From: Chrysemys picta bellii
Taxonomy: Eukaryota
Reading direction: 5' to 3'
Length of the DNA stretch: 63,808 nt
Assembly: GCF_011386835.1 (NCBI RefSeq)
Contig: NC_088794.1
Coordinates: 1,240,193 to 1,304,000 of the forward strand
Of the stretch, positions 3,928 through 61,904 are shown in pieces (position 1 is the first letter of the stretch; each line of letters starts with the position of its first letter). The translations under genes were made by a program, and so were the position numbers. Under the pieces are notes generated by a model. It was given only the letters and a program-made list of their open reading frames with translations, had not been told where the DNA came from and did no database searches.

Positions 3928-6900
3928 ATGCCCCTCGCCGTGGCGCCCGGCCTCCTGCTGCTGCTGCTGGCGAGCGGGGCCCGTGAGTAGCCGCCGGGGC
4001 CGCCCCCTGCTCCCCGGCCCCAGACCCTGCCCCAGGGGGGCGGCGTGGGCAGGAAACCCGGCCCCGCGGCCAGCCCGGGCGGTGCCTTGGCGGGATGGGG
4101 GTCCGGGCTGGGCGCAGGGTCCCGCCGGGCCTGGGGGGGGGGGTCTCCGAGCCAGAGGGGCTGGTGGGTGAAAGGGGGGACTGGGAGCCAGGACTCCTGG
4201 GTTCTCTCCCCGGCTCTGGGAGGGGAGTGGGGGCTGGTGGGTCAGAGCAGGAGGGGCTGGGAGCCAGGACTCCTGGGTTCTCTCCCCGGCTCTGGGAGGG
4301 GAGTGGGGGCTGGTGGTTAGAGCAGGGGGGTCTGGGAGCCAGGACTCCTGGGTTCTCTCCCCGGCTCTGGGAGGGCAGTGGGGGGCTGATGGGTGAAAGG
4401 GGGGAGCTGGGAGCCAGGACTCCTGGGTTCTCTCCCACACTGACACACCCCATGGCCAGCCCCCACTACAAACCCACGTCGTGCTCCCTCTAGGCCGCTC
4501 CTGCCCCCCAGCCCCATCGCACCCATCGCCCGCAACCTGCCCTGGGGTTCTGGGGCTAAATTTCAACACCCCCCCCCGCCCCCCACAGGGACCAGCTCAG
4601 CGCTGACGCCAGGGCCCTGGGGCGACCACTGTGGGGCTGGCAAGGGGGGTGTCATGGCCACCGAATTGGTTAATGCTGCTGGGGGGTGCACGGAGCCCTG
4701 ACCAAGTCAGCCCGGAGAGTTGCCCGATTAGTAGGAAGGCGGGTCGGACAGGTGGTGTTGGCTTTGGGGTGGGGGTTGGGTGTGGCGCTGACGTGGGGGT
4801 CAGACACAGGGCAGGGGTCCTGCTCACCACCCCAGCATGGGAGCAGTTGCGGGGAGGGTGGCCCCTGAGGGGAGCTTGAAGTAGGAGACTCAGGCTGTGG
4901 GTACAGAGGGGGTAGGTGGGGGGCTGGGGGCTCAGGCTGGGGGCACAGGGCGGGTAGGGGCTGGGGGCTCAGGCTGGGGGCACAGGGCGGGTAGGGGCTG
5001 GGGGCTCAGGCTGGGGGGCACAGTGCGGGTAGGGGCTGGGGGCTCAGGCTGGGGGCACAGGGCGGGTGGGGGGCTGGGAGTTCAGGCTGGGGGGCACAGT
5101 GCGGGTAGGGGCTGGGGCAGGGGGCTCAGGCTGGGGACACAGGGAGTGAGTGGGGGGCAGGTGGGGCAGGCTGGGGGGCACAGTGTGGGTAGGGGCTGGG
5201 GCAGGGGGCTGAGGCTGGGGGGCACAGGGGGCAGGTGGGGGGCTGGGGGCTCAGGCTGGGGGGCACAGTGCAGGTAGGGGCTGGGGACACTCAGGTGGGG
5301 CAGGCTGGGGGCACGGGATGAGTGGGGGGCAGGTGGGGCAGGCTGGGGGCACAGGGCGGGTAGGTGCTGGGGCAGGGGGCTCAGGCTGGGGGCACAGGGG
5401 GCAGGCTGGGGGCACAGGGCGGGTAGGTGCTGGGGCAGGGGGCTCAGGCTGGGGACACGGGGTGAGTGGGGGGCAGGTGGGGCAGGCTGGGGGCACAGGG
5501 CGGGTAGGGGCTGGGACCGTGACCGGGGTGGTGCTGGGGAACCATGTAACGGCCCCACCACAAGCTGCGCAAACAGGAAGCACGTCGCTTCCTCTGCCTG
5601 AGGCTCGGCGCCGCCTGCCCCCGCGGGAACCCAGCGCCCGGGCCACGTGGGACACGAGGCTGCCACGCCTCGGCCTGGAGCCCCCCCTACTCCCCCAGCA
5701 CTGACTGGCCCTTGCCGAGAGGATGTGGGCTCCCATGGTGCTGGGGCAGGTGGGGGGCTGGGGCAGGAGGCTTAGGCTGGGGGGCACCGGGCGGGTGGGG
5801 GCGGGAGGGGGTCAGTCCCTGGGGGGGGGGAGAGTCTCCCCCCTGGCTGCCCCACCCCTGCCCCCATGCCCCGCAGAGCGGCGAGTAATCCCGTCCGTCT
5901 GTCTGTCTGTGCAGGGGGTGCCCTGATGGTCTCTGTCCCCACTTCCCCGGTGCGGGCCCAGCCGGGCTCCGACCTGCTCCTGGGCTGTCACTTCTCCGTG
6001 GGGGGCACCGTGGACATGGAGGTGCTGGTGGTGCAGTGGAAGGTGGGGAGCCGCCTGGTGGCCGAGTTCGATACCACCCCGTCGTACCCCAGGGCCGGGG
6101 CCAGCCTGTCCCTGGAGGGGCTGCGGGTCGGCAACGCCTCCCTGCTCCTCCCGCGGGTGGGGGGCGCTGACGCCGGGCTCTACACCTGCATTGTCATCCA
6201 CTCCCCGAGCCGGGAGAGTCGGCAGGTGGAGCTGCGCGTGGAAGGTAACTGCAGGATGGGCTGGGGGGGCAGGGTTGGTTGGGGGGCAGGGTCCCAGGGC
6301 AGAGGCCAGAGGGGCCGTGGCTCCAGGGTTGGGTCCGGAGCCACCCTGTGGCCCCAGCACCTCTGGATAGGTCCGTGTTGGGAGCTCCTGCCCACGTGGC
6401 GATCAATGGGGGGAGGGTCCCAGCTGCATTGAGGGATCAGCCCCACTAAGCCACCTCCCCAGCTGCCCCTTCCCCATGGCCCAGCCAAGTCTCCATGGAC
6501 AGCACGATGGGGGCGGTTGGGGGTGGATGTGGTGGGGGGTGGCAGATGGGGTGGGGGGCAGATGAGGGAGGTGTGGGGCGGTTGGGGGCAGCTGAGGGGG
6601 TCTGGACCCCATTGACTCCCCCCTCCCCTTCCCCCCCCCAGCCCCGCCCCGTGTCTCGGTGAGCGGCACCGTGGTGAGGGCCGGCAAGCACAGCCCGGTG
6701 ACCTGCAGCGTGAGCGGCTTCTACCCCGGGAGCGTGAACGTCACGTGGCTGCGGGACAAGCAGGTCCTGGGGGGCTCCGAGACGCCTCCCGCCCAGCTGG
6801 GCCCCGACGGCCTGTACAGCACGACCAGCACCCTCCAGCTGGTGCCCAGCATCTCCCACGCCGACGCCAAGTACTCCTGCCACGTGCAGCACGTCGCCCT

Positions 6901-9900
6901 GGGGGAGCCGATCCAGGAGCCCTTCCGGCTGAGCGTGTTGTGTGAGTCACCCCACAGCACCTCCACCGCACCCCCCACTGCCAGAGCCCCACCCCACTGC
7001 ACCCCATTCCCCCCACAGCACCCCCACAGCACCCCCAACTGCCCATCCCCCGCCAGAGCCCCATCCCCCTCTGCACCCTCACTTCTATATACACCTCCGC
7101 AGCACCCCCCACTGCCAGAGCCCCACCCCACTGCACCCCATTCCCCCCACAGCACCCCCACTTCTATATACACCTCCACAGCAGCCCCCACTGCCAGAGC
7201 CCCACCCCCCACTGCACCCCATCCTCCCCACAGCACCCCCACTTCTATAGACACCTCCGCAGCACCCCCACTGCCAGAGCCCCACCCCACTGCACCCCAT
7301 TCCCCCCACAGAACCCCATCCCCCACAGCACCCCCACTTCTATATACACATCCGCAGCACCCCCAACTGCCAGAGCCCCACCCCCCATTGCACCCCATTC
7401 CCCCCACAGCACCCCATCCCCCACAGCACCCCCACTTCTATATACACATCCGCAGCACCCCCAACTGCCAGAGCCCCACCCCCCATTGCACCCCATTCCC
7501 CACACAGAACTCCATCCCCACAGCACCCCCACGTCTATACACGCTTCCGCAGCACCCCTCAGTGTCCATCCCCCACCAGAGCCCCATCCCGCTGCTGCAC
7601 CCCATCCTCCCCACAGCACCGCGCCCCATACTGCACCCCACAGCACCCCCATCCTCCCCTCAGCAGTGCCTACTCCACTGCCAGAGCCCTGTCCCCAGTG
7701 TAGCTCCCCCTCCCTATACAGCACCCCATTCCCATGCAGCACCCCCTCACTGAGCCCCCCGTGCCACTGGGGGCCCCCTTCCTTCTGCCTGGACCCCACA
7801 GGTGTCTGTTCCCCTGCTCTTACCTAGAGAGCCCCCCTTAACCTGCAGCAAGGGAGGTTTCCGTTGGTGTGACGAACTGGGACTGTTCTTACTGTGGTCT
7901 GTGAATGCTGACAGGGGAGTGTGGCTAGGATAGTCTGCATTGGGGTATGGGAGACTGGCCGAGGGAGAATACCTGAGCATGTAACATGAGAACCCAGGAA
8001 GGGGTTAGAGGCCAGGTGACACCTTTGCCTGGGAGACAGAAAAAAGGCTGTGGGGGGGTTGCTGAAGGGGGAGTTTCAGGAGCTGGCTAGGGACTTGGCT
8101 GGGAGGCAGACGGGGCTCTGACCTCCCAAGGGGGCTGGGGCGATTAACCCCTGGGAGTGTGTGACCAGTGAGAAGGACTGTTGCAGTAACAGGGTCCCCC
8201 GGGGGGATCGCAGCGAGCGGTCCCGGGGCGGAGGAGTCTGCAGCTCGACCCTGGCAGAGAGGTGGTGACCTGAAGAAGGGCTGGCACACTAGGAGTCTCC
8301 CTGGAACGGTGGAAAGCGGAGAGCACAGGCCGGCGAGTGGCCAGCAGGAGGATGGATGCTAAACGCCTTAAGAGCGACCTGGTGGAGCTGTGCAGGCAGA
8401 GGGGGCTGCACGTTGGGAGGTCCACCAAAGAACAGCTCATTGCCCAGCTGGAGGAGAGGGATCGCTTGGATGAACCGAGCCCTGTCCCTGAGGGAAGCCG
8501 CCCGGTGGATGCAGTGTGGGCCCTGGGGCCTGACATGGCTGGGAGGGGTCAGACTGCTGCCAAGGACATCCCGAGACCCTGTCTACCTATACCTAGGGGA
8601 GGGGTTGGGGGAAGCCCAGCGAATACCGAGGGCACCCTGACCCCGGCGGCCAGCAGGGGATCGTCCCGGCGGAGCTCCCTGTCCCGGGAGAAGATGCGGC
8701 TGGAATGCGACAGGGAGATGAGACGGGAAGAGCTTGAGTTAAGGAAGCAAGAACTGAAGCCGGAGCGGGAAGAGAAGGAGAAACAACGTCAGCATGAGCT
8801 AGAACTGGCCAGGCCGAGGAGCAGTGGGGCCCCGGCTGCGGTGAGCGAGGGGGGACCCAAGACTGCAAAGAGCTTTGATAAGTGCTTCCTGGCCCTGCGT
8901 AAGGAGGGGGAGGACATGGATACCTTCCTGACGGCCTTTGAGAATACCTGTGAGCTGCTCCAGGTTGACCCTGCAGACAGGCTCCAGTTTCTCATCCCCT
9001 CACTGGACCCCACAGCCAGGGAGGTGTACAGCCGACTGAAAGGGGCGGAGACAGGGGACTACGAACTGTTCAAAAAGGCCCTGCTCCGCGAGTTCGGGCT
9101 GACCCCTGAGACGTACCGGCAAAGGTTCCGGAATCAGCGTAAAACCCGTGAGGTCACATACCTACAACTAGCCAACCGGGCGCAGGGGTATGCCCGCAAG
9201 TGGACAGCTGGGGCCCAAACTATGGAGGACCTGCTTGACCTATTCGTACTGGAGCACGTGTATGAGCAGTGCCCACCCGACCTGAGGCGATGGTTGATGG
9301 ACCAAAAGCCAGAGAACCCACAGCACACAGGCCAGTTGGCCGACGAGTTTGTGAACAGTCGGGCAGGGGATAACCGGGAGGAGTCCCAAAGGAACCGGCC
9401 CGCCACAACGCAGAGAGAGAGTCACCATGGGACCTCCCAGCGGGGAAATATGGAGAACGCCCACCAAAGGGGAACATCCAGCGTCAGGTCCATCCAACCC
9501 GCTCAAGGGGACCCATGGGACATGGGCTGCTATCACTGTGGCCAAAGGGGCCACATACGGGCCCAGTGCTTCAGGCTCAGGGACAGACTGAGTGGACCCA
9601 ACCCACAGAGGGTTGACTGGGTAGAGACCCAGCCCGGCGAGAGGCAGCATTCCCAGGGAAGGGGGGCTGGCAGTGTACCACCTGCTAAGGACGGCGGAGA
9701 GCTCCAGGACAGCTCCTCTGGGGGGCTGGATGCTCCAGACTCAGGGTTTTTGGTTTATACGGTGGGCGCGGGGCAGTCCCTGCGGAGCGAGTACCTTGTT
9801 CCCCTGGAGGTGGATGGGAGGAAGGTCAATGGATACTGGGATACGGGCGCAGAGGTGACACTGGCCCAGCCCGAGGTGGTGGCCCCAGATCGGGTGGTGC

Positions 9901-12900
9901 CCGACACCTACCTGACCCTGACGGGGGTGGGTAGGACCCCATTCAAGGTGCTTGTGGCGAGGGTATACCTGAAGTGGGGGGCCAAGGAAGGCCCCAAGGA
10001 TGTGGGGGTACACCCGTATTTGCCCACTGAGGTATTGATGGGGGGGGGGGACCTGTAGGACTGGCCAAGCAACCCCCAGGGTGTCCTGGTTGTGACCCAC
10101 AGTCAGAGCTGGCGAGGGGCACTGTGCCCTGGCCTTGGGGAGGGTGCCTTGCCTGAGGCGCAGGACCCTAACCTGGTGGGGAGGGAACGCCCAGGGACAC
10201 GGCTCAGGGAGGCTGCAGCTTCAGACCCAGCGGGCGAGAAAGAGCAGGTGGCCATCCCTGTCCCAGCTGCTGAGTTCCAGGCCGAGTTGCAGAAAGACCC
10301 CTCCTTGCGGAAGATAAGGGACCTGGCCGACCTCAATGCGGTACAGACCATGGGACGAGGTGGCCGGAAAAGGTTCCTGTGGGAGAAGGGGTTCCTGTAC
10401 CGAGAATGGGCTCCCCCAGGGAAAATGGAGTCGGGGGGATCAGGAGGCAGCTGGTGGTTCCCCAGAAGTATCGCCGCCAGCTGCTGTGCCGGGCCCATGA
10501 CATTCCCCTCTCAGGGCACCAGGGAACCTGGCGTACCCAGCAGAGGCTGCTACGGAGCTTTTACTGGCCTGGGGTCTTTGCTACTGTCCGACAGTACTGC
10601 CGATCCTGTGACCCCCTGTCAGAGGGGGAGGAAGGCCTGGGACAAGGGGAAAACGGCTTTAGGACCCTTGCCCAGCATAGAGGAGCCTTTCCGGAGGGTG
10701 GCCAAGGTTAAAAGGGCGGCTCTGAACCAAGAGAGCCCAAAGCACAGACCTCCAGACTGGAGCGCTGGGAGAAGACCACAGCCCAATTGGAACCCCAGAG
10801 GTATGGGGGTGGGAAAAGGGCACAGGCCGCATAAACCTTCCCACATGCGAACTGCGAGTGCCATCAAGCACCCCCGACCTAAGGGGGGGCGTGAAACTGG
10901 AGGGGCTGGGTGTGCAGGGTGTCACAGAGTGTGGGGGACTCAGGGCCCTGTACCCCCGGCTTCCTGCAATTCACCATGACTCTCAGCTGGCCAGTAAAGC
11001 AGAAGGTTTATTTAGACGACAGGAACACAGTCCAAGACAGGTCTTGCAGGCACACACAACAGGACCCCCCAGTTAGGTCCATCTTGGGGTCCCCGGGTGC
11101 CCCAGCCCCCTTGGGAGGTCAGAGCCCCGTCTGCCTCCCAGCCAAGCCCCTAGCCAGCTCCTGAAACTCCCCCTTCAGCAACCCCCCCACAGCCTTTTTT
11201 CTGTCTCCCAGGCAAAGGTGTCACCTGGCCTCTAACCCCTTCCTGGGTTCTCATGTTACATGCTCAGGTATCCTCCCTTGGTCAGTCTCCCATCCCCCCA
11301 TGCAGACTATCCTAGCCACACTCCCCTGTCAGCATTCACAGACCACAGTCAGAACAGTCCCAGTTTGTCACATCTCTCCCCCCTTTGAGACCGAACTGAG
11401 CGGGGTCACTTTAGCCAGTGACCTGGGGAAGTTCAAATCTACCCCCGTTCCCATGGATGCCCCAACATCCCTCCCATTCCTTGATGAGAATTACACCAGG
11501 CCCCTCCAGTGTGTCCCCCCACACTCCGTGACAGTTGGACGTTAGGAAAAAGTTCCTAACTGGTTAAACACTGGAATAAATTGCCTAGGGAGGTTGTGGA
11601 ATCTCCATCTCTGGAGATATTGAAGAGTAGGTTAGATAAATGTCTATCCGGGATGGTCTAGACAGTATTTGGTCCTGCCATGCGGGCAGGGGACTGGACT
11701 CGACGACCTCTCGAGGTCCCTTCCAGTCCTAGAGTCTATGAATCTATGATGGTGTGACGAACTGGGCCTGTTCTCACTGTGGTCTGTGAATGCTGACAGG
11801 GGATAGTCTGCATTGGAGGATGGGATCTGCCCGAGGGCGCATACCTGAGTGTGTAACATGAGAACCCAGGAAGGGGTTGGAGGCCAGGTGACTCCTGAGC
11901 CCGGGAAACTGAACAAAGGCTGGGGGAGGGGTCGCTGAAGGGAGAGTGCTGGAAGCAGGCTGGAGAGATGGCTGGGAGACAGAGATGGCTCTGACCCCCC
12001 CGAAGGGGGGTGGGCTGGAATGCCCTGGGACCCCAAGCTGGACTTAACTGAGGGGGTCCTGCTGTCTGTGCCTGCAAGACCTGTCTTGGACTGTATTCCT
12101 GTCATCCAAATAAACCTTCTGCTTTACTGGCTGGCTGAGAGTCATGGTGAATCGCAGGAAGCCGGGGGTGCAGGGCCCTGAGTCCCCCAATACTCCGTGA
12201 CAGATGGTCCCCTCTGGGGGCCCCAGCCCATGGGGAGGGAGCCCAGCACCCTGACCTTGTCTTCCCACCCGGCAGCCCGGCCCTCCCTGACCCTGCAGAC
12301 GGTGGTGACACCGGCGGGGCTGGGCGCCCTGCAGGTCCAGGTGAGTGGCTACTACCCCCCCAACATCACGGTGGAATGGCTGCGGGACAGGGGGATCCTG
12401 CACAGCATGGAATCACTCCCCACACGGGCACCGGACGGGTCCTTCACCCTCCGCAGTAGCTACATCCTCGACCGCCCAGAGCCCGACACCCGGGTCGCCT
12501 TCACCTGCCGCGTGCAGCACCCGGCGCTGCCCACCCCGCTGGCGCAGAGCGTCACCTGGAAAGGTGAGTGTGACGGGCGGGGGGTGGGGTGGGGGAGTGT
12601 CTTTAACGAAGTGGGGATTTTCCCTTGTTACGTTGTGTTAAGCAAAAAGATTTTTTTTTTTTAAAGAATTAGGTAAGCATAGATGATATTGAAGGGGGGT
12701 TATTTGTGGTATTGGGAAGACTGACAAGCTGCTTCAAAAATATGGTGCCATAGTGGCCAGTTATATACATTCTTTTATTAATTTATTTGCATTTATTTGT
12801 ACATACAGAGACAGACGTTATAAGTCAAGACAGAACCCCAAACAAAGGTAAAAATAAGAACAGTGCGTACATATAGAGGTTATTTTATTTGCATTCAATT

Positions 12901-15194
12901 TGTATGGGTATTTTGTGGAAGAAGGAGGCGGGGGGGTAGGGATGAGTGCTCACAGACATCCGTTGGGTTGTGAAGGGAGGGTCAGCGTTGTTCTTTTTTA
13001 CTATTAAGCTGAGCTAAGTTACTAGGTATTGACAGAAACTATGTCCTTGCTTTTTAGCAGATTCTGTCTTTTTTTGCTGGCTGAATTTTAACTCCTTCCT
13101 AACAGTTGTATGCGAGTTTTACTGTTTTGCATGAATACGGTGTGTGCCTCAGTTTCCCTGTGTGCTGCACCAATACCTCGGTGGTGGGAATAGGGGTGTG
13201 TGACTTTGGCTGAGACCTCTGGGGCAGGTGAGGCTGGGCCAGCTATGACTGGTGCCCTTCCTAACCTGAGACACAGGAGGGGGGTGCGACCAGGTGACTG
13301 TCCGGAAAGCGAGACAAAGGAGGAGGAGGAGGAGCAATGGGGGTGTTGGAGGTGGAATCGCTGGAAGTTGGCAGTTTGCTTGGGGGGAATGGAAGAGGGG
13401 AAGTCCAGGCCGTCTGGCCCACGACTCCCCAAGATGGACTGGGCTGAAAGTCACTGATTTTTGTGCTAACAAGCTCTGTCCTACGTTGTGTTCCTGTCGT
13501 CTAATAAACCTCTGTGTTACTGGCTGGCTGAGAGTCACGTCTGACTGCGGAGTGGGGGTGCAGGACCCTCTGGCTTCCCCAGGACCCCGCCGGGGTGGAC
13601 TCGCTGTGAGAAGCGCACGGAGGGGCATATGCTGAATGCTCCCAGGAGGGACCCAGGAGGTGAAGCCGTGTGAGCTTCTTGCCCTGGATGTCAAGTATCA
13701 GAGGGGTAGCCGTGTTAGTCTGAATCTGTAAAAAGCAACAGAGGGTCCTGTGGCACCTTTGAGACTAACAGAAGAATTGGGAGCATAAGCTTTCGTGGGT
13801 AAGAACCTCACTTCTTCATGTTCTTACCCACGAAAGCTTATGCTCCCAGTACTTCTGTTAGTCTCAAAGGTGCCACAGGACCCTCTGTTACTTCTTGCCC
13901 TGGAGACAGTCTCCTCCAAGGAAGAGGAGGCTCCCCAGAGTCCTGACTGGCTTTGTGGGGAGCAGTTCCAGAGCATCGCCCGGGGACTCCGTGACATGGT
14001 CTAACACCCCCCCAGGCCTAGCCGGCCTCAGCATCGCTCCGCCTGTGCTGCCCCCTTCCCTGGCATTGGTCCCTCCCTGCTCCCCCAACTGTGTTCAGAT
14101 GACCAGCCTCCACTTTCATCTGCTCCCACGGGCGCCGGGGAACCTGTGAGCAGAGTCTGTCTCAGCCTAGGGCAAGGTGGGTGGGTGGAGCCCATTGCTG
14201 GAGGGAGCAGCCTGCTTCGTCTGTCTCTGGTTTTGGTGCTTCTGGGGCATCGTCCTGGGCTCCAGACACTGAACCTGAGTCACGCCGCAGCCCCCGGCAG
14301 GAGCCTGGATGGTCTTTAACTGCTCTGGGTGTGGGGCTGGGAGCGGAGCAGTAACGCTGTGCCTCTCCCTCGCAGGACCCGAACCAAGCCCAACTCGGGT
14401 CTGGATGTGGTTATGGCTGGCCATGGTGCCCCTACTGGTCGTGGTCTTGCTGTGCATCGGGTACTGGAGCTATCGCATCAGCAGTAAGTGGGCCCAGACC
14501 CCGTCCCCGAGGGGTTCCTCCTCCCTCCCCAGCCTCATGCGCTGCGCTCCCCTCCCCCACCACCCCCTCCCTCCGCCTCATGCCCTTCCCCCGCCTCCCC
14601 TTCCCCACGCCCTCCTCCCTATGGGCTCCTGCCCTTCCCCTGCCCCATGACCCACTCCCTCCAGCTCACACCATTCCCCCGCCTCCCCTTCCCCACGCCC
14701 TCCTCCCACTGGGCTCACGCCCTTCCCCCCACCTCCCCTCCCCCACGCTCTCCTCCCTATGGGCTCACACCCTTCCCTCTCCCCCACACCATCCCCTCTC
14801 CCCCAGCCCCACAGCTGCCCCCACCCAGCCTGACGCGCTCACCTCCCCGCAGTGTCCTCGATCCGTGCCTGGGAGTGTTGGCCGGAGGGCAGCGTGACAG
14901 CGCTGCTCTGCGAGGCGGAGGGGAGGCTCCGCGACACAGACAGCCTGACCTGGAGGAGCAAGCGCCAGGGGAAGGAGCTGGGGGCTGGGCAGCCCGGGGA
15001 GCTGAACACGCTGATGCCGAAGCTGGAGCAGCACCGCGTGGTGACGTGGCGGCGCGACCTCGGGCTGGGCAGGCGGCGGCTCACGTCGGTCGTCACCATC
15101 CAGACCCCGCGCGAAGACGACACTTTCAGCTGCACGTTCCAAGGCGCGAGGGGCATGAAGCAGACACACATCACAATCCCCGGCGTGCCGGCGG
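3928..15194 (+). CDS. B7/NCR3LG1/tapasin-like IgSF membrane protein: signal peptide-IgV-IgC1-IgC1-TM-post-TM Ig-like domain (about 475 aa; terminal exon uncertain)
   Basis: Exons 3928-3982 (MPLAVAPGLLLLLLASGA), 5915-6244 (V-set: LGCHF, QWK, GNASLLL, DAGLYTC), 6642-6941 (C1: VTCSVSGFYP, VTWLRD, YSCHVQH), 12276-12563 (C1: VSGYYP, VEWLRD, FTCRVQHPAL), 14376-14483 (TM: WMWLWLAMVPLLVVVLLCIGYW), 14853-15194 (LLCEAEG, LTW, FSCTF). All introns are GT-AG and phase 1, and the frame is open across all six exons. Confidence 0.85.
4185..4440. repeat. About 70-bp GGGAGCCAGGACTCCTGGGTTCTCTCCC repeat family, tandem and dispersed
   Basis: Four tandem units here. The same unit recurs in both orientations near 24190, 24490, 33150, 34290-34540, 55000-55360, 56070-56830, 57565-57660 and 61905-61950. 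Confidence 0.9.
4920..5515. repeat. G-rich minisatellite in IgSF intron 1
   Basis: gggggctcaggctgggggcacagggcgggtagg units. Confidence 0.9.
6950..7640. repeat. C/A-rich minisatellite of about 60 bp in IgSF intron 3
   Basis: cacagcacccccacttctatatacacctccgcagcacccccactgccagagcccca units. Confidence 0.9.
7868..11533 (+). mobile_element. Gmr1-like Ty3/gypsy LTR retrotransposon, non-autonomous (gag-pro plus integrase N-terminus only), with rearranged ends
   Basis: TGTGAC start and GTGACA end flanked by the 5-bp duplication GTTGG (7863-7867, 11534-11538), inside a CR1 3' fragment. Truncated 5' LTR 7868-8140; gag-pro ORF 8337-10058; integrase zinc-binding remnant (HDIPLSGHQG...YCRSCDP); inverted full LTR 10920-11372. 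Confidence 0.92.
8337..10058 (+). CDS. Retrotransposon Gag-protease ORF (SAP-like N-terminus, SCAN-like capsid, CCHC knuckle, aspartic protease), 573 aa
   Basis: LKSDLVELCRQRGL...KEQLIAQL (SAP-like); FGLTPETYRQRFR...LFVLEHVYEQCPPDLRRWL (SCAN-like); CYHCGQRGHIRAQC; YWDTGAEVTL. Confidence 0.85.
   Translation: MASRRMDAKRLKSDLVELCRQRGLHVGRSTKEQLIAQLEERDRLDEPSPVPEGSRPVDAVWALGPDMAGRGQTAAKDIPRPCLPIPRGGVGGSPANTEGTLTPAASRGSSRRSSLSREKMRLECDREMRREELELRKQELKPEREEKEKQRQHELELARPRSSGAPAAVSEGGPKTAKSFDKCFLALRKEGEDMDTFLTAFENTCELLQVDPADRLQFLIPSLDPTAREVYSRLKGAETGDYELFKKALLREFGLTPETYRQRFRNQRKTREVTYLQLANRAQGYARKWTAGAQTMEDLLDLFVLEHVYEQCPPDLRRWLMDQKPENPQHTGQLADEFVNSRAGDNREESQRNRPATTQRESHHGTSQRGNMENAHQRGTSSVRSIQPAQGDPWDMGCYHCGQRGHIRAQCFRLRDRLSGPNPQRVDWVETQPGERQHSQGRGAGSVPPAKDGGELQDSSSGGLDAPDSGFLVYTVGAGQSLRSEYLVPLEVDGRKVNGYWDTGAEVTLAQPEVVAPDRVVPDTYLTLTGVGRTPFKVLVARVYLKWGAKEGPKDVGVHPYLPTEVLMGGGDL
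11534..11749 (+). mobile_element. CR1 LINE 3' end; its upstream part (about 7838-7867) was split off by the LTR element
   Basis: gttggacgttaggaaaa...ggtcccttccagtcctagagtctatgaatctatga terminal repeat; joins in register with ...gggaggtttccgttgg at 7867. Confidence 0.85.
11753..12202 (+). mobile_element. Solo LTR (450 bp), same family as the 7868 element
   Basis: TGTGAC...GTGACA with 5-bp duplication GATGG (11748-11752, 12203-12207); internal AATAAA. Confidence 0.93.
12637..13104 (-). mobile_element. AT-rich insertion, probable 3' end of a non-LTR retroelement
   Basis: Sharp drop in GC; T-run at 12651-12662; flanked by GTTGT on both sides (12632-12636, 13105-13109); family not recognised. 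Confidence 0.45.
13689..13890. mobile_element. Penelope-like element fragment folded back on itself (70-bp inverted repeat)
   Basis: gtagccgtgttagtctg...ggcacctttgagactaac...agctttcgtggg; arms 13737-13806 and 13820-13889 match 68/70; 14-bp duplication CTTCTTGCCCTGGA (13675-13688, 13891-13904). Confidence 0.8.
14520..14790. repeat. C/T-rich minisatellite between the TM exon and the post-TM Ig exon
   Basis: ccccacgccctcctccctatgggctc units. Confidence 0.75.
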
Positions 15195-15393
15195 GTGAGC
15201 AGGGCACGGACTGGGGGAAAGGGGCTGTGGGGGTGGCAGATCAGCGCAGCGGGAGCAGGAGGCTGTGGGGTGCAGGGCTGCAGGGGCATGTGTAGATTGG
15301 GGTGCCATGGGGAGACAAGGAGATTTGGGGCATAGGGGGCACAGAATGCAGGGGGAGGGGAAGGGGGTTCTGTTGGATATGGGGTGTAGTGGA

Positions 15394-15971
15394 TGTCACG
15401 GCGTCCCCGGGCGATGCTCTGGAACTGCTCCCCACAAAGCCAGTCAGGACTCTGGGGAGCCTCCTCTCCCTCAGAGCAGACTGTCTTCAGGGCAAGAAGC
15501 TCACACGGCTTCACCTCCTGGGTCTCTCCTGGGAGCATTCAGCCTATGCCCCTCCGTGCACTTCCCACAGCGAGTCCGCCCTGGCGGGGTCCTGGGGAAG
15601 CCACAGGGTCCTGCACCCCCCACTTCTCAGTCAGACGTGACTCTCAGCCAGCCAGTAACACAGAGGTTTATTAGTCGACAGGAACACGGTCTAAAACAGA
15701 GCTTGTAGGTACAGGAAACAGGACCCCTCCATCAAGACCATCTTGGGGGGTGGGGAGCCCAGACCCCGGTGCCGGGCCTCCCCCATCTCCCCAGCCAGCT
15801 CCAAACTGAAACCCCTTTTTCCTGCCTTCCGCAGCCACACACCCCAACTCCTCCTGCACCTTTGCCTAGTTTCCCTGTCAGAAGTTGTCACCTGGCCCCA
15901 ACCTCCTGGACTCAGGTTATGAAGATCAGCCTAGTCTACAATCTGTTTACAAGACAGGAAGGCTGGTTACA
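15394..15971 (-). mobile_element. Solo LTR (Gmr1-type)
   Basis: Reverse complement of the 3' half of the 12602-13996 LTR; TGTCAC and GTTACA termini; no clear target-site duplication. Confidence 0.8.
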
Positions 15972-18055
15972 CGTGATCTCCCCCCCCCCCACACCGCCTG
16001 CCCCTCCCCAGCATGAACCCTACAAAGTCAGGAAGCGCCAAGTTCTGGGGCAGCTCCGAGCCGTCGCCTGATGCTCCCACAACATGTTTCCAGGGGCGGT
16101 GACAGACTCGCACCTCGCAGGGGAGCTCCTGGGGCCTGGAAGGGATGTGCCCAGCCGCTGGGATGTGCCATGCTCAGCCCGGGTCGACAGACACGCACTC
16201 AGTCTGCTCCAGCTACCGCCTGACAATAGCCGTGTGGGCACAGCGGGGCAGTGGGGGGCCAGGCTAGCACCGAGTGAGCACCCAGGGGCCAGGCAGGGCT
16301 GTACTCCGGTGACTAGCCTGAGCTCCCGCGGCCACGCGGCTGTTTTTAGCACCAGGCCGTCTGTCTGTCCCCGCTGGGAATGACCCCTCCCGGCCGCTGT
16401 GTAGACGTGCCCGGCCAGATACGGACACACCGCAATCGGCACCCGCATCTCCCTGCCAATACACCACCAAGCTGTCCCTGTGAGCTCCCACCCCGTACAC
16501 ACAGCTCTCTGGGTGGAGTGCAGGGAGATTGTCAGCACCTTTGGCGGCAGCCCTGCGCCAGTCAGTGGGGCTGGGAGCTTTTCACACCAGGGCCAGAGAT
16601 TCGTTTGTTCTGGTTCGTTCCTCCCCGGCTCAAACGGCTGCCGGGATCGTGCCCAGACGTTACACGAGTCACCTCGGGGGCCAAACCTCACAGGAACTTT
16701 AGCAAAGGTGTAGAATGAAACCCCTTGTGCAGCCGTAAATACAGCGTGTGCAGCATCGCCCACAGCAGCCTGGGGCAGGGATGTTGCCCCTTTTCCCCAA
16801 GGAGGGAAGGATTCCCTGGGATTTAAGGGCCAGCTGGTGATCCCCTCGTCAGGGTGGGTAGCAGAGCTAGAGTCACCTGTCAGCAGGTTCCCCTGGGCTC
16901 GGCCGTTACAAGCACATTACGAACCCTGGGGGATTCCTGGCCCAGTCCTGGTGCTTCCTTGTTTGGGTGCATGGGATTTAAATGTTTTCACACCTCAGCT
17001 CGGAGAGAACCAAGAGCCGGGACATGGGCATCTCGTGTGAGATCAGCCCTGTCTGTCCCCACCCGCCCCCTTTCCCAGCGACGCCTGAGTCGGTTCCCTG
17101 GAGAGACGTTAAATTCTCCCCTTTACCAGCTAGCGTGGGACATATCTCTGCTCTCCAAACTCCCTCACCATCAGCGCCCAGGGTGGACAGCACCTGACCA
17201 TGCTGGCAGCCTGGTTCTCTGGCCTGGGGAGGGAAGAGCTAACAAACAGCTCAGAGGCATGGGGGGCTGTTTCCCAGATACCCAGCCTGGAGCAGTTACA
17301 GCCAGGTCTGAGCTCGGTATGTCCCAGGATTCCCGGGGCAGGCAGCGAGCTGTGGGGCCCCCCAGAACCCAGCACCCACCTGGGTGAGGTCATGGGGTGG
17401 TTTCTCCCCCTCTCGGGGCAGGGTCTGTTCTGTGGATGGCAGGGCTGGGCAGTGTGGGGAGCAGAGGTGGGTCAGCTCCCAGGGACTGAGTCTGGTGTAT
17501 TCACAGGGTCCCCAGGCAGGGGCCTCATTCCCGTTCTGTTCCTCCCTCCAGGTGGCCCGCTTCTGGATGGAGACATGGCCATTTTTTGACCGTCCTGCAC
17601 TCACGCTACGGCCGGTGCTGGGGGGAGAGAGAGAGCCAGCTGCAAACTGCTCGTAGAGGAGAGAACAAACTGACCCCTTGTGATGCTGTGTGATTGACAT
17701 GTGACTGTGTACAGCCTTGGTGTGGCCACTGTGCTCCAACTGCAAGAGAACTTGTACCAAGTGCGTCGTGTCCGGTGTCACTGGAAAAGTTGCGAATTGC
17801 TAAGTATGGATATCCTGCTTATATGTGTACCACCCCCCGCCCCCGTCCACTGGCCCAGTGTGAGGTTGTTCCAGATAGGGGAAGCCTCTTTGTGACCTTT
17901 TACACAACTTTAGGGGACTGGGCCTGAGGCTCCTTTGTGTGCTCTGCGTTGTGTGTCAGTGTGTTCACCTCAGCCCAGACCCACTCAGACAAACCACCAG
18001 AGAGCGCGACCGCACTGTCCCTTTAAGGCGCTTTAAGCTGCTAAGTGTCGACTCA

Positions 18056-18588
18056 GGCTACGGCTACACGAGAGAGTTCAAAGCGCTGCCACCTGAGTGC
18101 TCCCGCAGCAGCACTTTGATGTGCGAGTGGGGTTGTGCGCGAGACAGCTCTCCCAGCGCGCCTGGTAATCCACCTCCACGAGGGGAGTCGCTCCGAGCGC
18201 CGGGAGCCTGTCTACACTAGCGCTTTAAAGCGCTCAGACTTGCTGCGCTCGGGGGTGATTTTTCACCCCCCTGAGCAGCGGCGGCTCCAGGCACCAGCGC
18301 CCCAAGCGCATGCCTGGGGCAGCAAGCCGTGGGGGGCGGCCTGCCGGTCCCTGCGAGGGCAGCAGTCAGGCAGCCTTCGGCAGCATGCCTGCGGGAGGTC
18401 CATGGTCCCGCGGCTTTGGCGACAATTCGGCGGCGGGTACGTCGAAGCCGCTGGACCGGCAGACCTCCCGCAGGTGTGCCGCTGAAAGCCGCCTGACAGC
18501 CGTGTTTGGGGCGGCAGAAAAGCTAGAGGCACCCCTGCCACTGAGCCAGCGAGTTAGAGTGCTATAAAATCTACGTGTAGACAAGCCC
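18056..18588. mobile_element. PIF/Harbinger-like MITE containing a nested hAT-like MITE (18276-18537)
   Basis: Outer ends ggctacggctacac and gtgtagacaagccc with tca/tta flanks; inner ends cagcggcggctccag and ctagaggcacccctg with 8-bp flanks cccctgag/ccactgag. Confidence 0.7.
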
Positions 18589-33425: not shown

Positions 33426-34262
33426 TCAGTGGGGGGGAGCTGGCCCCATCTCCTCCCCCTCGGGGGGCGGCTGTATCTCCTGGTCCTTGGGCACCAGGGT
33501 CCCGCTCAGCTGGGCCCCGAAGGTGCGCTGCAGCAGGGCGGGGATCTCGTGGGGCTGCAGGGGGGTCTCCGTGCGCTCCCCGCCCCGCGTGGCGATGAGG
33601 CGCCAGCCCATGTAGGTGAGGCGGCCACCGCCCGGCTGGGGCAGGCTGCAGAAGGACTTGCAGGCGAAGATGGAGCTGGGGGCCTGTTGGTGGTAGCAGC
33701 ACATGGCGGCGAAGTCTCCCAGCTCCCGCTCCTCCAGCGTGAAGGTGTAGAGCATCTGCCCCTCCTCGCCCGGCGCCCGCAGCCGCTCCAGCGCCCAGAC
33801 GCCCCCCGCCAGGCCCAGCCGGAAGGTGCCGCCCTCCTGCGGCTGCTCCAGGCCCGGCTCCAGCCACAGGGGCTCCAGGAAGCCGTCCCCGAAGCCCACG
33901 TCGCACAGGAAGCGCTGGCCCCCCAGCCGGGCCAGCAGCACCAGGTGGTCGCAGGGTGGCCCGAGGCGCCCGGTGAAGCGGTTCCGGACGCGGCCGGCCA
34001 GCCCCACGACACAGAAACCCAGCGCCCGCAGCAGCCACTGGAAGAGCCCGTTGTTCTCGTAACAGAAGCCGCCACGGCGCCGCCGGACGATCTTGTCGTA
34101 GAGCAGGGGCAGCGCCAGGGTGATGGGCTCCCCACAGTGCATGCTCAGGCTCTCAAAGGGCACCGAGAACAGGTGGCAACGGTGCAGCCCCCGCAGCGTC
34201 TCCAGGGTGGGCTCTGTCGGGCCCTGGTACCCGATCCGGGAGAGATAGGCACCCACGTCCAT
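33426..34262 (-). CDS. Arylamine N-acetyltransferase with intronless CDS, 278 aa
   Basis: MDVGAYLSRIGY, VPFESLSMHCGE, RRGGFCYENNGLF (catalytic Cys), DHLVLL (His), LCDVGFG (Asp). Splice acceptor 6 nt upstream of the ATG. Orthology to NAT1/NAT2 not claimed. Confidence 0.93.
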   Translation of the reverse strand: MDVGAYLSRIGYQGPTEPTLETLRGLHRCHLFSVPFESLSMHCGEPITLALPLLYDKIVRRRRGGFCYENNGLFQWLLRALGFCVVGLAGRVRNRFTGRLGPPCDHLVLLARLGGQRFLCDVGFGDGFLEPLWLEPGLEQPQEGGTFRLGLAGGVWALERLRAPGEEGQMLYTFTLEERELGDFAAMCCYHQQAPSSIFACKSFCSLPQPGGGRLTYMGWRLIATRGGERTETPLQPHEIPALLQRTFGAQLSGTLVPKDQEIQPPPEGEEMGPAPPH

Positions 34263-35349
34263 CCCAGGCTGGGGGGCAAAGCGGGGACTGTGAGCAGAGA
34301 ACCCAGGAGTCCTGGCTCCCAGACCCCCACCCCGAGCCAGAGTTAGAACCCAGGAGTCCTGGCTCCCGGCACTCACCACTGGATCCCCTCCTCCCCAAGC
34401 TAGGGAGAGAACCCAGGAGTCCTAGCTCCCAGCACTCACTGCTGGATCCCCTCCTCCCCGAACCAGGGAGAGAACCCAGGAGCCCTGGCCCTGAGCCCCC
34501 CGCTCTAACCCCCCAGCCCCCCTCCTCTCCCAGAGCTGGGTTCGAATCCGGGCCTACAGCACTCACACTGGGGTGCAGCTGGCCCTGCCCAGGGTTTTGC
34601 TTCCGCATCTCCGGGGGCGGGGAGGCACGTGGTTCTGCCCCCCCCCCCACGTGACAGCTCCTTAACCCCTCCTAGCCTGGCCTCTCCCTGGTAGCCATGG
34701 GGCAAAGGGGGTTGGCATCATCCGTTGGAGCAGCCTCCCACTCTCCCACCTGGTAATCACCCCCCGGTCTCCCAACTCCCCCTTCCCAGTGCCAACAGAT
34801 CCCCCGACATCTGAGGCCCCTGTGCCCCCCATGCCCTGTGTTCCCAGCCCCCATTGCCCCCCCCCCTTAACCACTGAATTCAAAGCACAGGGAGTATTAC
34901 CTGTGCACCCCCCCCACACACACACACAGGTGATTTGATGAGTTTCGGAGATGCTGGATTGGGGGGCAGGGGCAGCAGGGGGTGAGGTCAGAGGTCAGCA
35001 CAGGTCCCATGGCATGGTCAGCAGGTGCACGCTCCTCCCGCTTGGAGAGGGCGGCTCCGGGGCACTGACAAGCAGCCAGAGGTGGGGCCGGGGCAGAGCA
35101 TGGGCACCTGCTGGGCCTGCACCTCCCACCGCTGCCCCAGGGGGGCGTCATTGGGCACCGCTGTGGGCAGGGGCTGGCACCGGGATCGGGCACCGGGGCC
35201 AGCTCGGGCAGCATCTCCTCCTGCTCCTGCCGCTGCCAGCCCCGGGCGCCAGCCTGTCAGGGGTCCAGCAGCCACAGCGCCCGCAGGGTGGGCATCCAGC
35301 CGCTCCACCAGCCGGGCGACGCAGCGTCTTATCCCGGTGCTTGGCCTCC

Positions 35350-60600: not shown

Positions 60601-61904
60601 GGGGTATTGGGGTGGGAAAAGGACACGGGCCGCATAAACGCTCCCACATGCGAACTACAAGTGCCATCGACGTAAGGGGGGGCGTGAAACTGGAGGGGCC
60701 TGGTGTAATTCCCACTCAGGAATGGGAGGGATGCGGGGGCATCCACGGGAATGGGGGTAGATTCGAACTTCCCCGGGTCACTGGCTGAAGTGACCCTGCT
60801 CAGTTCAGTCTCCCCGTGACGAACTGGGACTGTTCTTAATGTGGCCTTTGAATGCTGAGTGGGGGGTGTTGGCTGGGAAGGCAGCGGAGTGTGGCTAGGA
60901 TGGTCTGCATTGGGGAAGGGGAGACTGACCGAAGGAGAATACCTGAGCATGTAACATGAGAACCCAGGAAGGGGTTAGAGGCCAGGTGACACCTTTGCCC
61001 GGGAAACTGAACAAAGTCTGGGGGAGGAGCCAGGAGAGGCTGGGTGAGAGATGCTGGAGGGAGTTGGAGTTGTCAGGAGCTGGCTGGTGTAATGGAGGGG
61101 AGCCCAGACAGGTAGGGTTACCATATCTCATAAATAAAAAAAGAGGACCCTCCACGGGCCCTGGCCCCGCCCATTTCCCCACCCCAACTCCGCCCCTTCC
61201 CCACCCTAACTCCGCCCTCTCCTCCCTCCCACTCCCAGCCACGCGAAAAGGGCTGCCCGAGCGCTACCGGCTTCACGGTTTGCCGGGCAGCCCCCAGACC
61301 CTGCGCCCCCAGCCGGCGCTTGCCCAGCGCAGCTGGAGCCCGGGAGGGGAAGCGCCCAGCCGGGGGCGCAGGGTCTGGAGGCTGCCCGGCAAACCGTGAA
61401 GCCGGTAGCGCTCGGGCTTCGGGCAGCCCCTATGCCCCCGGACCCTGCGCCCCCGGCCGGGCACTTCCCCTCCCGGGCTCCGGCGGCGCAGGGTCTGGAG
61501 GCACGGGGGCTGCCCGAAGCCGGTAGCGCTCGGGCAGCCCGGCTCTTAAACAGAGCCGAAGAGTCGGGGAGGAGCAGAGCCGCCATTTTCCTGGACATAT
61601 TCGGCTTTTTGGCAATTCCCCCCGGACGGGGGTTTGAATGCCGAAAAGCCGGACATGTCCGGGAAAAAGAGGACGTATGGTAACCCTACAGACAGGGCTC
61701 TGACCTCCCAAGGGGGCTGTGGGGCCCTGCGACCCCAAAATGGACCTAACTCAGGGGGGTCCTGTTGTGTGTACCTGCAAGACCTGTCTTGGACTGTGTT
61801 CCTGTCGTCTAAATAAACCTTCTGCTTTACTGGCTGGCTGAGAGTCATGGTGAATCGCAGGAAGCCGGGAGCGCAGGGCCTTGTGTCCCCCACACTACGT
61901 GACA
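57685..61904 (+). mobile_element. Gmr1-like non-autonomous LTR retrotransposon (gag-pro plus integrase N-terminus), second copy
   Basis: 5' LTR 57685-57805 (internally deleted); PBS TGGTGGCAGTGGTGGGAT 57808-57825 (17/18 match to the complement of the tRNA-Leu AAG/TAG 3' end); frameshifted gag-pro; 3' LTR about 60815-61904; flanks CCCAC/TCCAC. Confidence 0.92.
61113..61688. mobile_element. hAT-superfamily MITE (576 bp) inside the 3' LTR
   Basis: TIRs TAGGGTTACCATA/TATGGTAACCCTA; perfect 8-bp duplication CAGACAGG (61105-61112, 61689-61696); internal 38-bp perfect inverted repeat (61255-61292, 61380-61417). Confidence 0.93.

What the first reader, a model, noticed from the sequence alone, without database searches (positions are those of the whole stretch)
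14853..15194. An Ig-like domain exon after the transmembrane exon: a B7-like receptor with an apparently cytoplasmic Ig domain
Seen: after signal-V-C1-C1-TM, a clean 342-nt phase 1-1 exon (branch-like CTGAC/CTCAC, pyrimidine tract, CAG...G|GTGAGC) continues the frame. It encodes LLCEAEG...LTW...LTSVVTI...FSCTF, a C1-like Cys-Trp-Cys pattern with about 74 residues between the Cys. Established: in a type I protein with one TM this segment is cytosolic, where B7/butyrophilin relatives carry B30.2 domains or Tyr motifs and where an Ig disulfide should not form. Inference: an unusual signalling or trafficking module, or an isoform switch. The predicted tail contains no ITIM/ITAM-like Tyr motif. I cannot say whether this architecture has been described before.
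Basis: partly seen in the sequence, partly recalled or inferred. Interest (0 to 1): 0.8.

Follow-up and report, generated by a model that had tools for sequence, protein, structure and literature searches.

The report
Turtle receptor with cytoplasmic Ig domain
In the painted turtle, a B7/SIRP-like surface receptor gene splices an extra immunoglobulin-fold domain onto the inner side of its membrane anchor; all turtles examined share this, gene-prediction pipelines have modelled it, and I found no paper describing it.

Summary
RNA-derived contigs from four studies join the TM exon (14376-14483) to the exon at 14853-15194 and then to a last exon at 17552, all GT..AG. The spliced window exons translate 100% to Chrysemys picta bellii XP_065447118.1, misnamed "SIRP-alpha-like".

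The exon has no Pfam hit. AlphaFold2 gives a confident beta-sandwich (pLDDT 80.6). It superposes on C1-type Ig domains of HLA class II, butyrophilin, PD-L1 and CH3 at Z about 11, 2 A over 90 residues.

The domain occurs in every turtle lineage sampled, including a side-necked turtle. Cys-Trp-Cys is invariant. Purifying selection is moderate: omega 0.48, omega=1 rejected at p=7e-7. Squamate homologues have a short non-Ig tail instead.

There is one signal peptide and one hydrophobic span, so the domain is predicted cytosolic. It has no internal glycosylation sequon and a variable number of cysteines.

Function is unknown. My best guess is a cytosolic interaction module, analogous to the butyrophilin B30.2 domain. 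The main rival is an extracellular role in isoforms without the TM exon. I rate it a new variant of a known kind.

The parts
3928..3982 (+). Exon 1, coding part: start codon and signal peptide, with donor C|GTGAGT
   Evidence: Sequence read. Matches residues 1-19 of XP_065447118.1 (P0012).
5915..6244 (+). IgV exon, phase 1-1
   Evidence: Pfam V-set. The spliced translation is identical to P0012. Best solved relative of the V-C1 pair is CD276.
6642..6941 (+). First C1-set Ig exon (C1a)
   Evidence: Pfam C1-set E 3e-16. Identical to P0012.
8274..10976 (+). Intronic LTR-retrotransposon gag-like remnant. It is not part of the protein, but it enlarges intron 3.
   Evidence: Long open frames. Pfam SCAN plus zf-CCHC. 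A second copy lies at about 58074-60785.
12276..12563 (+). Second C1-set Ig exon (C1b). The B-strand cysteine is replaced by Val in this species.
   Evidence: Pfam C1-set E 1e-8. Exon ends fixed by RNA joints. Compared across turtles.
12809..12847 (+).
   Evidence: GT..AG joints on both sides in all 4 runs. Sequence. Present in P0012.
14376..14483 (+). Transmembrane exon: one hydrophobic span of about 23 residues, then YRIS. The last base starts the split Met codon.
   Evidence: Translation. Joints. It is the only hydrophobic span besides the signal peptide in six orthologues.
14853..15194 (+). The finding: a 342-nt exon encoding a C1-type Ig-fold domain on the C-terminal side of the TM span. 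Cys19, Trp33 and Cys93 are invariant in turtles.
   Evidence: Joints 14483>14853 and 15194>17552 in 4 runs. AF2 pLDDT 80.6. VIA-align Z about 11 to C1-set domains. Conservation. Omega 0.48, p=7e-7 against omega=1.
17552..17590 (+). Coding part of the last exon: 12 residues then TGA. The 3' UTR runs on beyond 18099.
   Evidence: Joint in 4 runs, with contigs continuing to the end of the laid stretch. Sequence. Identical to the P0012 C-terminus. Predicted disordered.

Best explanation
This is a real, constitutively spliced coding exon of a painted-turtle B7/SIRP-like type I membrane protein. The protein reads: signal peptide, IgV, C1, C1, short stalk, one TM helix, this domain, then a 12-residue tail.

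The exon encodes a divergent C1-type immunoglobulin beta-sandwich of about 113 residues. With a cleaved signal peptide and a single TM span, it lies on the cytosolic side in the main isoform.

The domain is shared by both turtle suborders and is absent from the squamate homologues, which keep a short tail. No archosaur homologue was recovered, so gain in the turtle stem and loss elsewhere cannot be told apart. How it arose is not resolved. I infer that an Ig exon downstream of the TM exon was captured into the transcript.

Shown here: splicing, conservation, purifying selection and the predicted fold. Inferred: the cytosolic location and the function.

Most likely function, at roughly 40% given the architecture: a folded cytosolic protein-interaction module that couples the ectodomain to signalling or trafficking partners. 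It would stand where butyrophilins carry a B30.2 domain and SIRP-alpha carries ITIMs. The invariant surface motifs, EGRL after strand B and LGRxRL entering strand E, are candidate contact sites.

The confidence given is for the core claim: a real exon, an Ig-like fold, and a cytosolic position in the main isoform.
For: Splicing: RNA joints link C1b, micro-exon, TM exon, this exon and the last exon in 4 runs from 4 studies, and one contig bridges four of these exons.

Identity: the spliced translation is 100% XP_065447118.1.

Other species: the same exon order and splice sites are seen in Chelonia, Dermochelys and Caretta DNA. The same architecture appears in 11 turtle proteins from several annotation pipelines.

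Fold: AF2 pLDDT 80.6, pTM 0.75, reproduced with a deeper alignment. VIA-align gives Z 10-11, rmsd about 2 A over about 90 residues, to HLA class II, BTN, PD-L1, B7-H6, ICOS-L and CH3 constant domains. Foldseek hits are all Ig domains. Protein-language-model neighbours are C1-set and C2-set clusters.

Selection: Cys, Trp, Cys and 19 other positions are invariant. Codon ML gives omega 0.48, against 0.60 (V), 0.25 (C1a) and 0.35 (C1b). Omega=1 is rejected with 2dlnL 24.7, p=7e-7. All indels in the exon are in frame. Neutral simulation kept all 10 frames open in 1 of 400 runs.

Cytosolic side: there are only two hydrophobic segments. The domain has no N-glycosylation sequon, whereas the ectodomain has 1-4. 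Cysteine number varies from 3 to 8 among species and is often odd. In sea turtles and tortoises a Cys-Cys pair sits next to the membrane, as at palmitoylation sites (my reading). In no annotated isoform is this exon present without the TM exon.
Against: No sequence-based method recognises an Ig domain, so the fold rests on prediction from shallow alignments of 6 and 11 sequences.

Topology was not measured. It was not run through a dedicated predictor either. Flanking charges are only weakly positive-inside.

Both canonical disulfide cysteines are invariant in an otherwise fast-changing domain. That is what one expects of a domain that folds in the ER lumen.

All structural neighbours are extracellular domains.

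Contigs drop rare variants, so a minor isoform skipping the TM exon cannot be excluded. All exons are phase 1, so such skipping would stay in frame.

No binding partner or signalling motif was identified.
Confidence: 0.65

Rival explanations
1. The domain works outside the cell. Its selected context would be a minor secreted isoform that skips the TM exon (V-C1-C1-Ig). In the membrane isoform it would be carried into the cytosol only as a by-product of shared 3' exons.
For: All exons are phase 1-1, so skipping the 108-nt TM exon keeps the frame. Both disulfide cysteines are invariant across turtles. Tortoise models show cassette use at this locus, including a TM-less secreted form and an extra canonical C1 exon after this domain. 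All structural neighbours are extracellular.
Against: No TM-skipping joint appears in any of the four runs, while the TM-to-domain joint is in all four. The one TM-less model also lacks this exon, so the two exons always travel together. The domain has no glycosylation sequon, unlike every ectodomain Ig domain of the protein. Its cysteine number is variable and often odd, which is unusual for secreted Ig domains.
Confidence: 0.17
2. The domain is a tolerated evolutionary relic. An Ig exon was captured into the 3' end of the gene and is translated, but it has no function of its own beyond being a harmless tail.
For: It is the fastest-evolving part of the gene: tree length 4.7 substitutions per codon against 1.1-2.3 for the other Ig exons. 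Simple pairwise dN/dS is about 1. No motif, partner or Pfam family is recognisable. No tyrosine motif is present.
Against: Codon ML, which accounts for the strong GC3 bias, gives omega 0.48 and rejects neutrality at p=7e-7. The frame is open in all species (1 of 400 under neutrality). Indels are in frame. Fold-determining and several surface residues are invariant in both turtle suborders.
Confidence: 0.12
3. It is not an Ig domain or not a real exon: a chance open frame in G+C-rich DNA, wrongly modelled by gene predictors.
For: Random open frames over 100 codons are common in this window. Pfam finds nothing. Profile comparison with the gene's own C1 exons shows no similarity.
Against: Spliced RNA from 4 studies, conservation with purifying selection, and a reproducible confident beta-sandwich model with Z about 11 to C1 domains.
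Confidence: 0.03

Closest known systems
B7 family, especially CD276 (B7-H3)
   Same: An IgV followed by a constant-type Ig domain, a single TM span, and phase-1 exons with one domain each. CD276 is the best solved sequence match for the V-C1 pair (E 2e-24, full coverage). PD-L1, B7-H6, ICOS-L and CD80 IgC domains are among the best structural matches of the extra domain.
   Different: This protein has a second C1 domain in the ectodomain and a folded Ig-like domain after the TM span. As far as I know, B7 proteins have short unstructured tails. No receptor is known for it.
SIRP-alpha / SIRP-beta (PTPNS1), the name RefSeq gives the gene
   Same: V-C1-C1 ectodomain order. SIRP-alpha is the second-best non-antibody sequence match (E 4e-20).
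   Different: There is no ITIM or any conserved tyrosine in the tail, and no conserved basic residue in the TM span for DAP12 pairing. The tail is an Ig-like domain.
Butyrophilins (BTN1A1, BTN3A1)
   Same: A B7-related V-C ectodomain, one TM span, and a folded beta-sandwich domain in the cytoplasm. This is the closest analogue in design. BTN IgC domains are top structural matches of the extra domain.
   Different: The butyrophilin cytoplasmic domain is B30.2 (PRY-SPRY), a different fold and family. None is detected here.
Squamate homologues (Tiliqua, Gekko, Rhineura, Varanus; P0016-P0019)
   Same: The same signal-V-C1-C1-TM layout, 41-44% identical over the ectodomain.
   Different: After the TM span they have a short, lysine-rich, non-Ig tail of about 25-90 residues. 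The extra Ig domain is seen only in turtles.
Cytosolic Ig domains of titin, obscurin and myosin-binding protein C
   Same: An Ig fold working in the reducing cytosol (from general knowledge). Papers using the phrase 'intracellular Ig domain' concern these proteins.
   Different: Those are I-set domains of soluble sarcomeric proteins. They are not a C1-type domain attached to the cytoplasmic end of an immune-type membrane receptor.

Membership tests
Immunoglobulin C1-set domain (for the exon 14853-15194) | B-strand Cys, C-strand Trp and F-strand Cys pins | tested here: met
   Cys19, Trp33 and Cys93 are invariant in 11 turtle sequences. They lie in predicted strands 14-23, 30-35 and 89-97. The Cys-Cys spacing of 74 is longer than usual for C1, because of a low-confidence insertion at residues 45-59.
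Immunoglobulin C1-set domain (for the exon 14853-15194) | Match to the family's sequence profile (Pfam PF07654 or any other Ig model) | tested here: not met
   No Pfam family at E up to 10 for any of six orthologues. A PDB profile search gave only non-significant VH hits at E 0.1 or more.
Immunoglobulin C1-set domain (for the exon 14853-15194) | Seven-strand constant-type beta-sandwich that superposes on solved C1 domains | tested here: met
   AF2 pLDDT 80.6. VIA-align Z 10-11.3, rmsd 1.9-2.5 A over 85-95 residues, to HLA-DP beta2, BTN IgC, PD-L1 IgC, CH3 and IgNAR C domains. This rests on a prediction, not a solved structure.
Immunoglobulin C1-set domain (for the exon 14853-15194) | Intradomain disulfide formed in an oxidising compartment | not testable with these tools
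   The predicted topology puts the domain in the cytosol. The redox state of the Cys pair needs biochemistry.
B7 family | IgV plus IgC ectodomain with significant similarity to B7 members, and a single-pass type I layout | tested here: met
   CD276 E 2e-24 over residues 1-197 of the V-C1 query; B7-H6 E 5e-15. One signal peptide and one TM span.
B7 family | Binds a CD28/CTLA4-family or related receptor | not testable with these tools
   No partner is known.
SIRP family | V-C1-C1 ectodomain | tested here: met
   Pfam V-set, C1-set, C1-set. SIRP-alpha E 4e-20.
SIRP family | Cytoplasmic ITIMs (alpha) or a basic TM residue with a short tail (beta) | tested here: not met
   Zero to two tyrosines in the cytoplasmic part, none conserved. 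No conserved Lys or Arg inside the TM span.
Butyrophilin family | Cytoplasmic B30.2 (PRY-SPRY) domain | tested here: not met
   No SPRY or PRY hit. The fold of the tail domain is Ig C1-type.
Tapasin / TAPBPR (names given to the Chelydra and Pangshura models) | Large N-terminal domain before the IgV-like and IgC1 domains | tested here: not met
   The mature protein starts directly with the IgV domain after a 20-residue signal peptide. TAPBPR matches only the V-C1 part at E 3e-15.

The most novel reading that the evidence does not exclude
A canonical C1-type immunoglobulin domain, with its disulfide cysteines still conserved, has been recruited to the cytosolic face of an immune-type receptor. 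It has been kept there since the two turtle suborders split, as a signalling or adaptor module. It would be a turtle-specific functional analogue of the butyrophilin B30.2 domain, and the first Ig domain I know of that operates inside the cell as part of an IgSF surface receptor.
Probability: 0.35. Interest if true: 0.8.

Novelty: new variant of a known kind. Interest (0 to 1): 0.62.

Why it matters
IgSF receptors are built on a strict rule: Ig domains outside, short motifs or dedicated signalling domains inside. This protein appears to place an Ig domain on the wrong side of the membrane, and has kept it under purifying selection in both turtle suborders.

If the cytosolic location holds, three questions become testable:
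- How does a disulfide-type Ig domain fold and act in a reducing compartment?
- Can an exon captured behind a TM exon become a new intracellular module?
- Do reptile B7-like receptors, like butyrophilins, sense or signal through a folded cytoplasmic sandwich?

There is also an annotation problem. Orthologues are currently named hemicentin-2, SIRP-beta-1-like, LSAMP-like, tapasin-like and PTPNS1-like. None of these names is apt.

Tried and rejected
Sequence-family searches
- Pfam on the exon and on five orthologues gave nothing.
- Profile-profile comparison with the gene's own C1a and C1b exons, and with the tortoise extra C1 exon, gave no signal at probability 1.2% or less. The source of the captured exon is unresolved.
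- A PDB profile search returned only antibody VH and nanobody hits at E 0.1-2, with an FR1/FR2-like stretch. These are not significant, and the structure search favours C-type over V-type.

Selection
- Nei-Gojobori pairwise dN/dS was about 1.0-1.3 for this exon and also for V and C1a. I replaced it with codon ML because GC3 is extreme and kappa is about 4.
- Exon-versus-intron divergence depended on the alignment and was not used.

Binding
- Homodimer test of the domain: no verdict (score 0.03, controls not run, alignment not used). This counts neither for nor against self-association.

Distribution
- An exhaustive HMMER search with the exon found one turtle cluster representative plus one low-complexity false hit.
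- Word-indexed searches found turtles and squamates only, with no archosaur or amphibian homologue.
- A tblastn for the tortoise extra C1 exon in the window and in three sea-turtle loci found none.

Other
- Flanking charge (the positive-inside rule) was uninformative.
- Earlier scan notes near this place: none.
- Three literature searches found no description of the architecture.
Full report
WHAT IS THERE

Branch-point-like CTGAC and CTCAC, a pyrimidine tract and a CAG acceptor precede it. A G|GTGAGC donor follows it. Its 342 nt in phase 1-1 translate without a stop. An open frame of this size is not remarkable in itself here. The window is about 65% G+C and is full of chance frames over 100 codons. 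The case therefore rests on RNA and on comparison between species.

RNA EVIDENCE

I laid Logan contigs of four small RNA-type runs, from four different studies, on 12100-18099. The runs come from a closely related or conspecific organism, about 2% diverged by my estimate from the word shares. All four show the same GT..AG joints:
- C1b exon (12276-12563) to a 39-nt micro-exon (12809-12847)
- micro-exon to the TM exon (14376-14483)
- TM exon to 14853
- 15194 to 17552, with contigs running on to the end of the stretch

One 624-nt contig carries C1b, the micro-exon, the TM exon and the first 162 nt of the exon in question. No joint skipping the TM exon was seen. Contigs drop rare variants, so that absence is weak evidence. 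One run shows a minor alternative acceptor near 15834 at low depth.

GENE MODEL AND IDENTITY

The exons at 5915-6244, 6642-6941, 12276-12563, 12809-12847, 14376-14483, 14853-15194 and 17552-17590 splice to a translation 100% identical to residues 20-499 of P0012. The signal exon at 3928-3982 supplies the start. P0012 is XP_065447118.1 of Chrysemys picta bellii, named 'tyrosine-protein phosphatase non-receptor type substrate 1-like isoform X1'.

So the window is painted turtle and the architecture already exists as an automatic RefSeq model. The protein reads: signal peptide, IgV, C1, C1, 13-residue stalk, one hydrophobic span, the 114-residue exon product, then a 12-residue tail ending in TGA. 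Everything else was right.

IS IT AN IG DOMAIN?

Sequence methods say nothing:
- No Pfam family at E up to 10 for the painted-turtle sequence or five sea-turtle orthologues.
- No profile-profile similarity to the gene's own C1 exons.
- Only insignificant VH hits in a PDB profile search.

Structure prediction is clear:
- AlphaFold2 with a six-sequence alignment gives an eight-strand all-beta model, mean pLDDT 80.6, pTM 0.75.
- An eleven-sequence alignment gives the same strands and a disordered tail.
- An all-against-representatives structural search gives Z 10-11.3 at about 2 A over about 90 residues. The matches are constant-type domains: HLA-DP beta2, butyrophilin IgC, PD-L1 IgC (24% identity), B7-H6, ICOS-L, CD80, CH3 and IgNAR C domains.
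- Foldseek against PDB and Swiss-Prot models returns only Ig domains.
- Language-model neighbours are C1-set and C2-set clusters.

The strand-E to strand-F stretch (RLTSVVTI ... FSCTF) resembles, to my eye, the CH1 pattern. The unusually long Cys-Cys distance of 74 is explained by a low-confidence insertion at residues 45-59. I therefore call it a divergent C1-type Ig-fold domain. The caveat is that the fold is predicted, not solved.

DISTRIBUTION

An exhaustive HMMER search with the exon found one cluster representative, green turtle XP_037754784.1. It has the same order of parts.

Further searches recovered orthologues with the domain in five sea turtles, Emys, Malaclemys, Mauremys, three tortoises, Chelydra and the side-necked Emydura. 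They carry unrelated automatic names: hemicentin-2, SIRP-beta-1-like, LSAMP-like, tapasin-like and TAP binding protein-like.

In green turtle, leatherback and loggerhead DNA the TM and Ig exons have the same splice sites: AGCA|GTAAGT, CAG|TGTCC and G|GTAAGT.

Squamate homologues (41-44% identical over the ectodomain) have the same V-C1-C1-TM layout but short lysine-rich tails without the domain. No archosaur homologue was recovered, and the searches were limited in reach.

The domain is thus shared by both turtle suborders. By general knowledge that split is on the order of 200 million years old. The domain is not detectable elsewhere.

SELECTION

Across eleven turtles 22 positions are invariant. 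They include the B-strand Cys, C-strand Trp and F-strand Cys, an EGRL motif after strand B and LGRxRL at strand E.

Pairwise Nei-Gojobori dN/dS is about 1 for this exon, but also for the V and C1a exons. That method is unreliable here, given the extreme GC3 content and kappa of about 4.

Codon maximum likelihood (GY+F3X4) on ten species gives these omega values:
- V: 0.60
- C1a: 0.25
- C1b: 0.35
- this exon: 0.48

Fixing omega at 1 is rejected for this exon (2dlnL 24.7, p=7e-7). Its indels are all multiples of three. Neutral simulation on the same tree left all ten frames open in only 1 of 400 runs.

The exon is the fastest-changing part of the gene: tree length 4.7 against 1.1-2.3 substitutions per codon. 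It is nevertheless constrained about as much as the ectodomain Ig domains.

WHICH SIDE OF THE MEMBRANE?

Six orthologues have exactly two hydrophobic segments: the N-terminal signal peptide and one span of 19-31 residues. By the established rules of type I insertion, the domain is then cytosolic.

Supporting hints:
- The domain has no N-X-S/T sequon in any species, apart from one directly at the membrane. The ectodomain has one to four.
- The number of cysteines in the cytoplasmic part ranges from 3 to 8 and is often odd.
- Sea turtles and tortoises have a Cys-Cys pair directly after the span, as at palmitoylation sites.
- The domain never appears without the TM exon in any annotated isoform.

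Against: both disulfide cysteines are invariant, and every structural neighbour is extracellular. Flanking charges are uninformative. I put the cytosolic location at about 75%.

ISOFORMS IN TORTOISES

Gopherus models add a further, canonical C1 exon between this domain and the last exon (602-residue isoform). They also include a form like the painted turtle's (487 residues) and an Ensembl-derived form that skips both the TM exon and this exon and would be secreted (453 residues). That extra exon is absent from the window and from three sea-turtle loci.

This shows cassette behaviour at the 3' end of the gene and keeps the isoform rival alive. It also shows that the TM exon and the Ig-like exon are used as a unit.

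MECHANISM

Shown: the exon is expressed, in frame, conserved, constrained and predicted to fold as an Ig sandwich behind a single TM span.

Inferred: it sits in the cytosol and serves as a protein-interaction module. It would replace the tyrosine motifs of SIRP-alpha or the B30.2 domain of butyrophilins.

A test for self-association gave no verdict. No tyrosine motif exists. Most species end in a [S/T]-x-[L/F/V] C-terminus that could be a PDZ ligand, but emydids and tortoises do not. This is only a lead.

COMPARISON AND NOVELTY

The ectodomain is closest to CD276 (E 2e-24), then SIRP-alpha, TAPBPR and B7-H6. It fails the defining tail features of SIRPs and butyrophilins and lacks tapasin's N-terminal domain.

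Three full-text searches found no description of an IgSF receptor with an Ig domain behind its TM span. Phrases such as 'intracellular Ig domain' lead mostly to titin and obscurin.

The gene model is known to annotation pipelines. The architecture as a biological feature appears undescribed. I rate it a new variant of a known kind, with interest 0.62.

Noticed in passing
window 12809-12847: A 39-nt in-frame stalk micro-exon lies between the second C1 exon and the TM exon and is used in all four RNA runs. It is present in emydid and Mauremys models but absent from sea-turtle, tortoise, Chelydra and Emydura models.
   Followed up: partly
window 12276-12563; loci L001-L009: The second C1 domain has lost its B-strand cysteine in Chrysemys, Emys, Malaclemys, Mauremys and Chelydra, but keeps it in sea turtles, Gopherus and Emydura. 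C1b and the TM exon fall into two sequence types that do not follow the species tree: Gopherus groups with sea turtles there, but with Mauremys in the Ig-like exon. This suggests gene conversion, old allelic lineages or hidden paralogues.
   Followed up: partly
window 8274-10976 and 58074-60785: Two copies of an LTR-retrotransposon gag-like open frame (SCAN-like capsid plus zinc knuckle). The first sits in the intron between the two C1 exons and enlarges it to 5.3 kb. Related LTR-like repeats flank it near 8000-8350 and 11080-11400.
   Followed up: partly
window 14484-14852: The intron between the TM exon and the Ig-like exon is a C/T-rich repeat that would read as proline-rich in all frames. 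It is 369 nt here, 145 nt in green turtle, 330 nt in loggerhead and 486 nt in leatherback.
   Followed up: no
window 15834-17471: One run (X4) joins 15194 to an alternative acceptor near 15834, in a 1.6-kb low-depth contig with many differences. It may be a minor alternative 3' end or a retained intron. It would give a different short tail.
   Followed up: partly
locus L007 (Gopherus evgoodei); proteins P0028, P0010, P0008: Tortoises have an additional canonical C1-set exon after the Ig-like exon. They also have a modelled isoform without the TM and Ig-like exons that would be secreted. The extra exon is not found in the painted-turtle window or in the sea-turtle loci.
   Followed up: partly
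window 33429-34421, minus strand: An intact single-exon arylamine N-acetyltransferase gene (Pfam Acetyltransf_2, E 2e-62).
   Followed up: no
window 38681-39754 and 49283-50434: Exons of a major-facilitator (spinster-like) transporter gene. The Pfam MFS_1 hit is weak; the similarity to spinster is my own reading of the translation.
   Followed up: no
proteins P0007 and P0039 (Eretmochelys imbricata): One hawksbill model (410 residues) reads the Ig-like exon in a shifted frame and ends early. Another hawksbill model of 489 residues sits in the 90%-identity cluster of the intact Caretta protein; I did not read its sequence. This could be an assembly or annotation difference, or an allele with a frameshift.
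   Followed up: no
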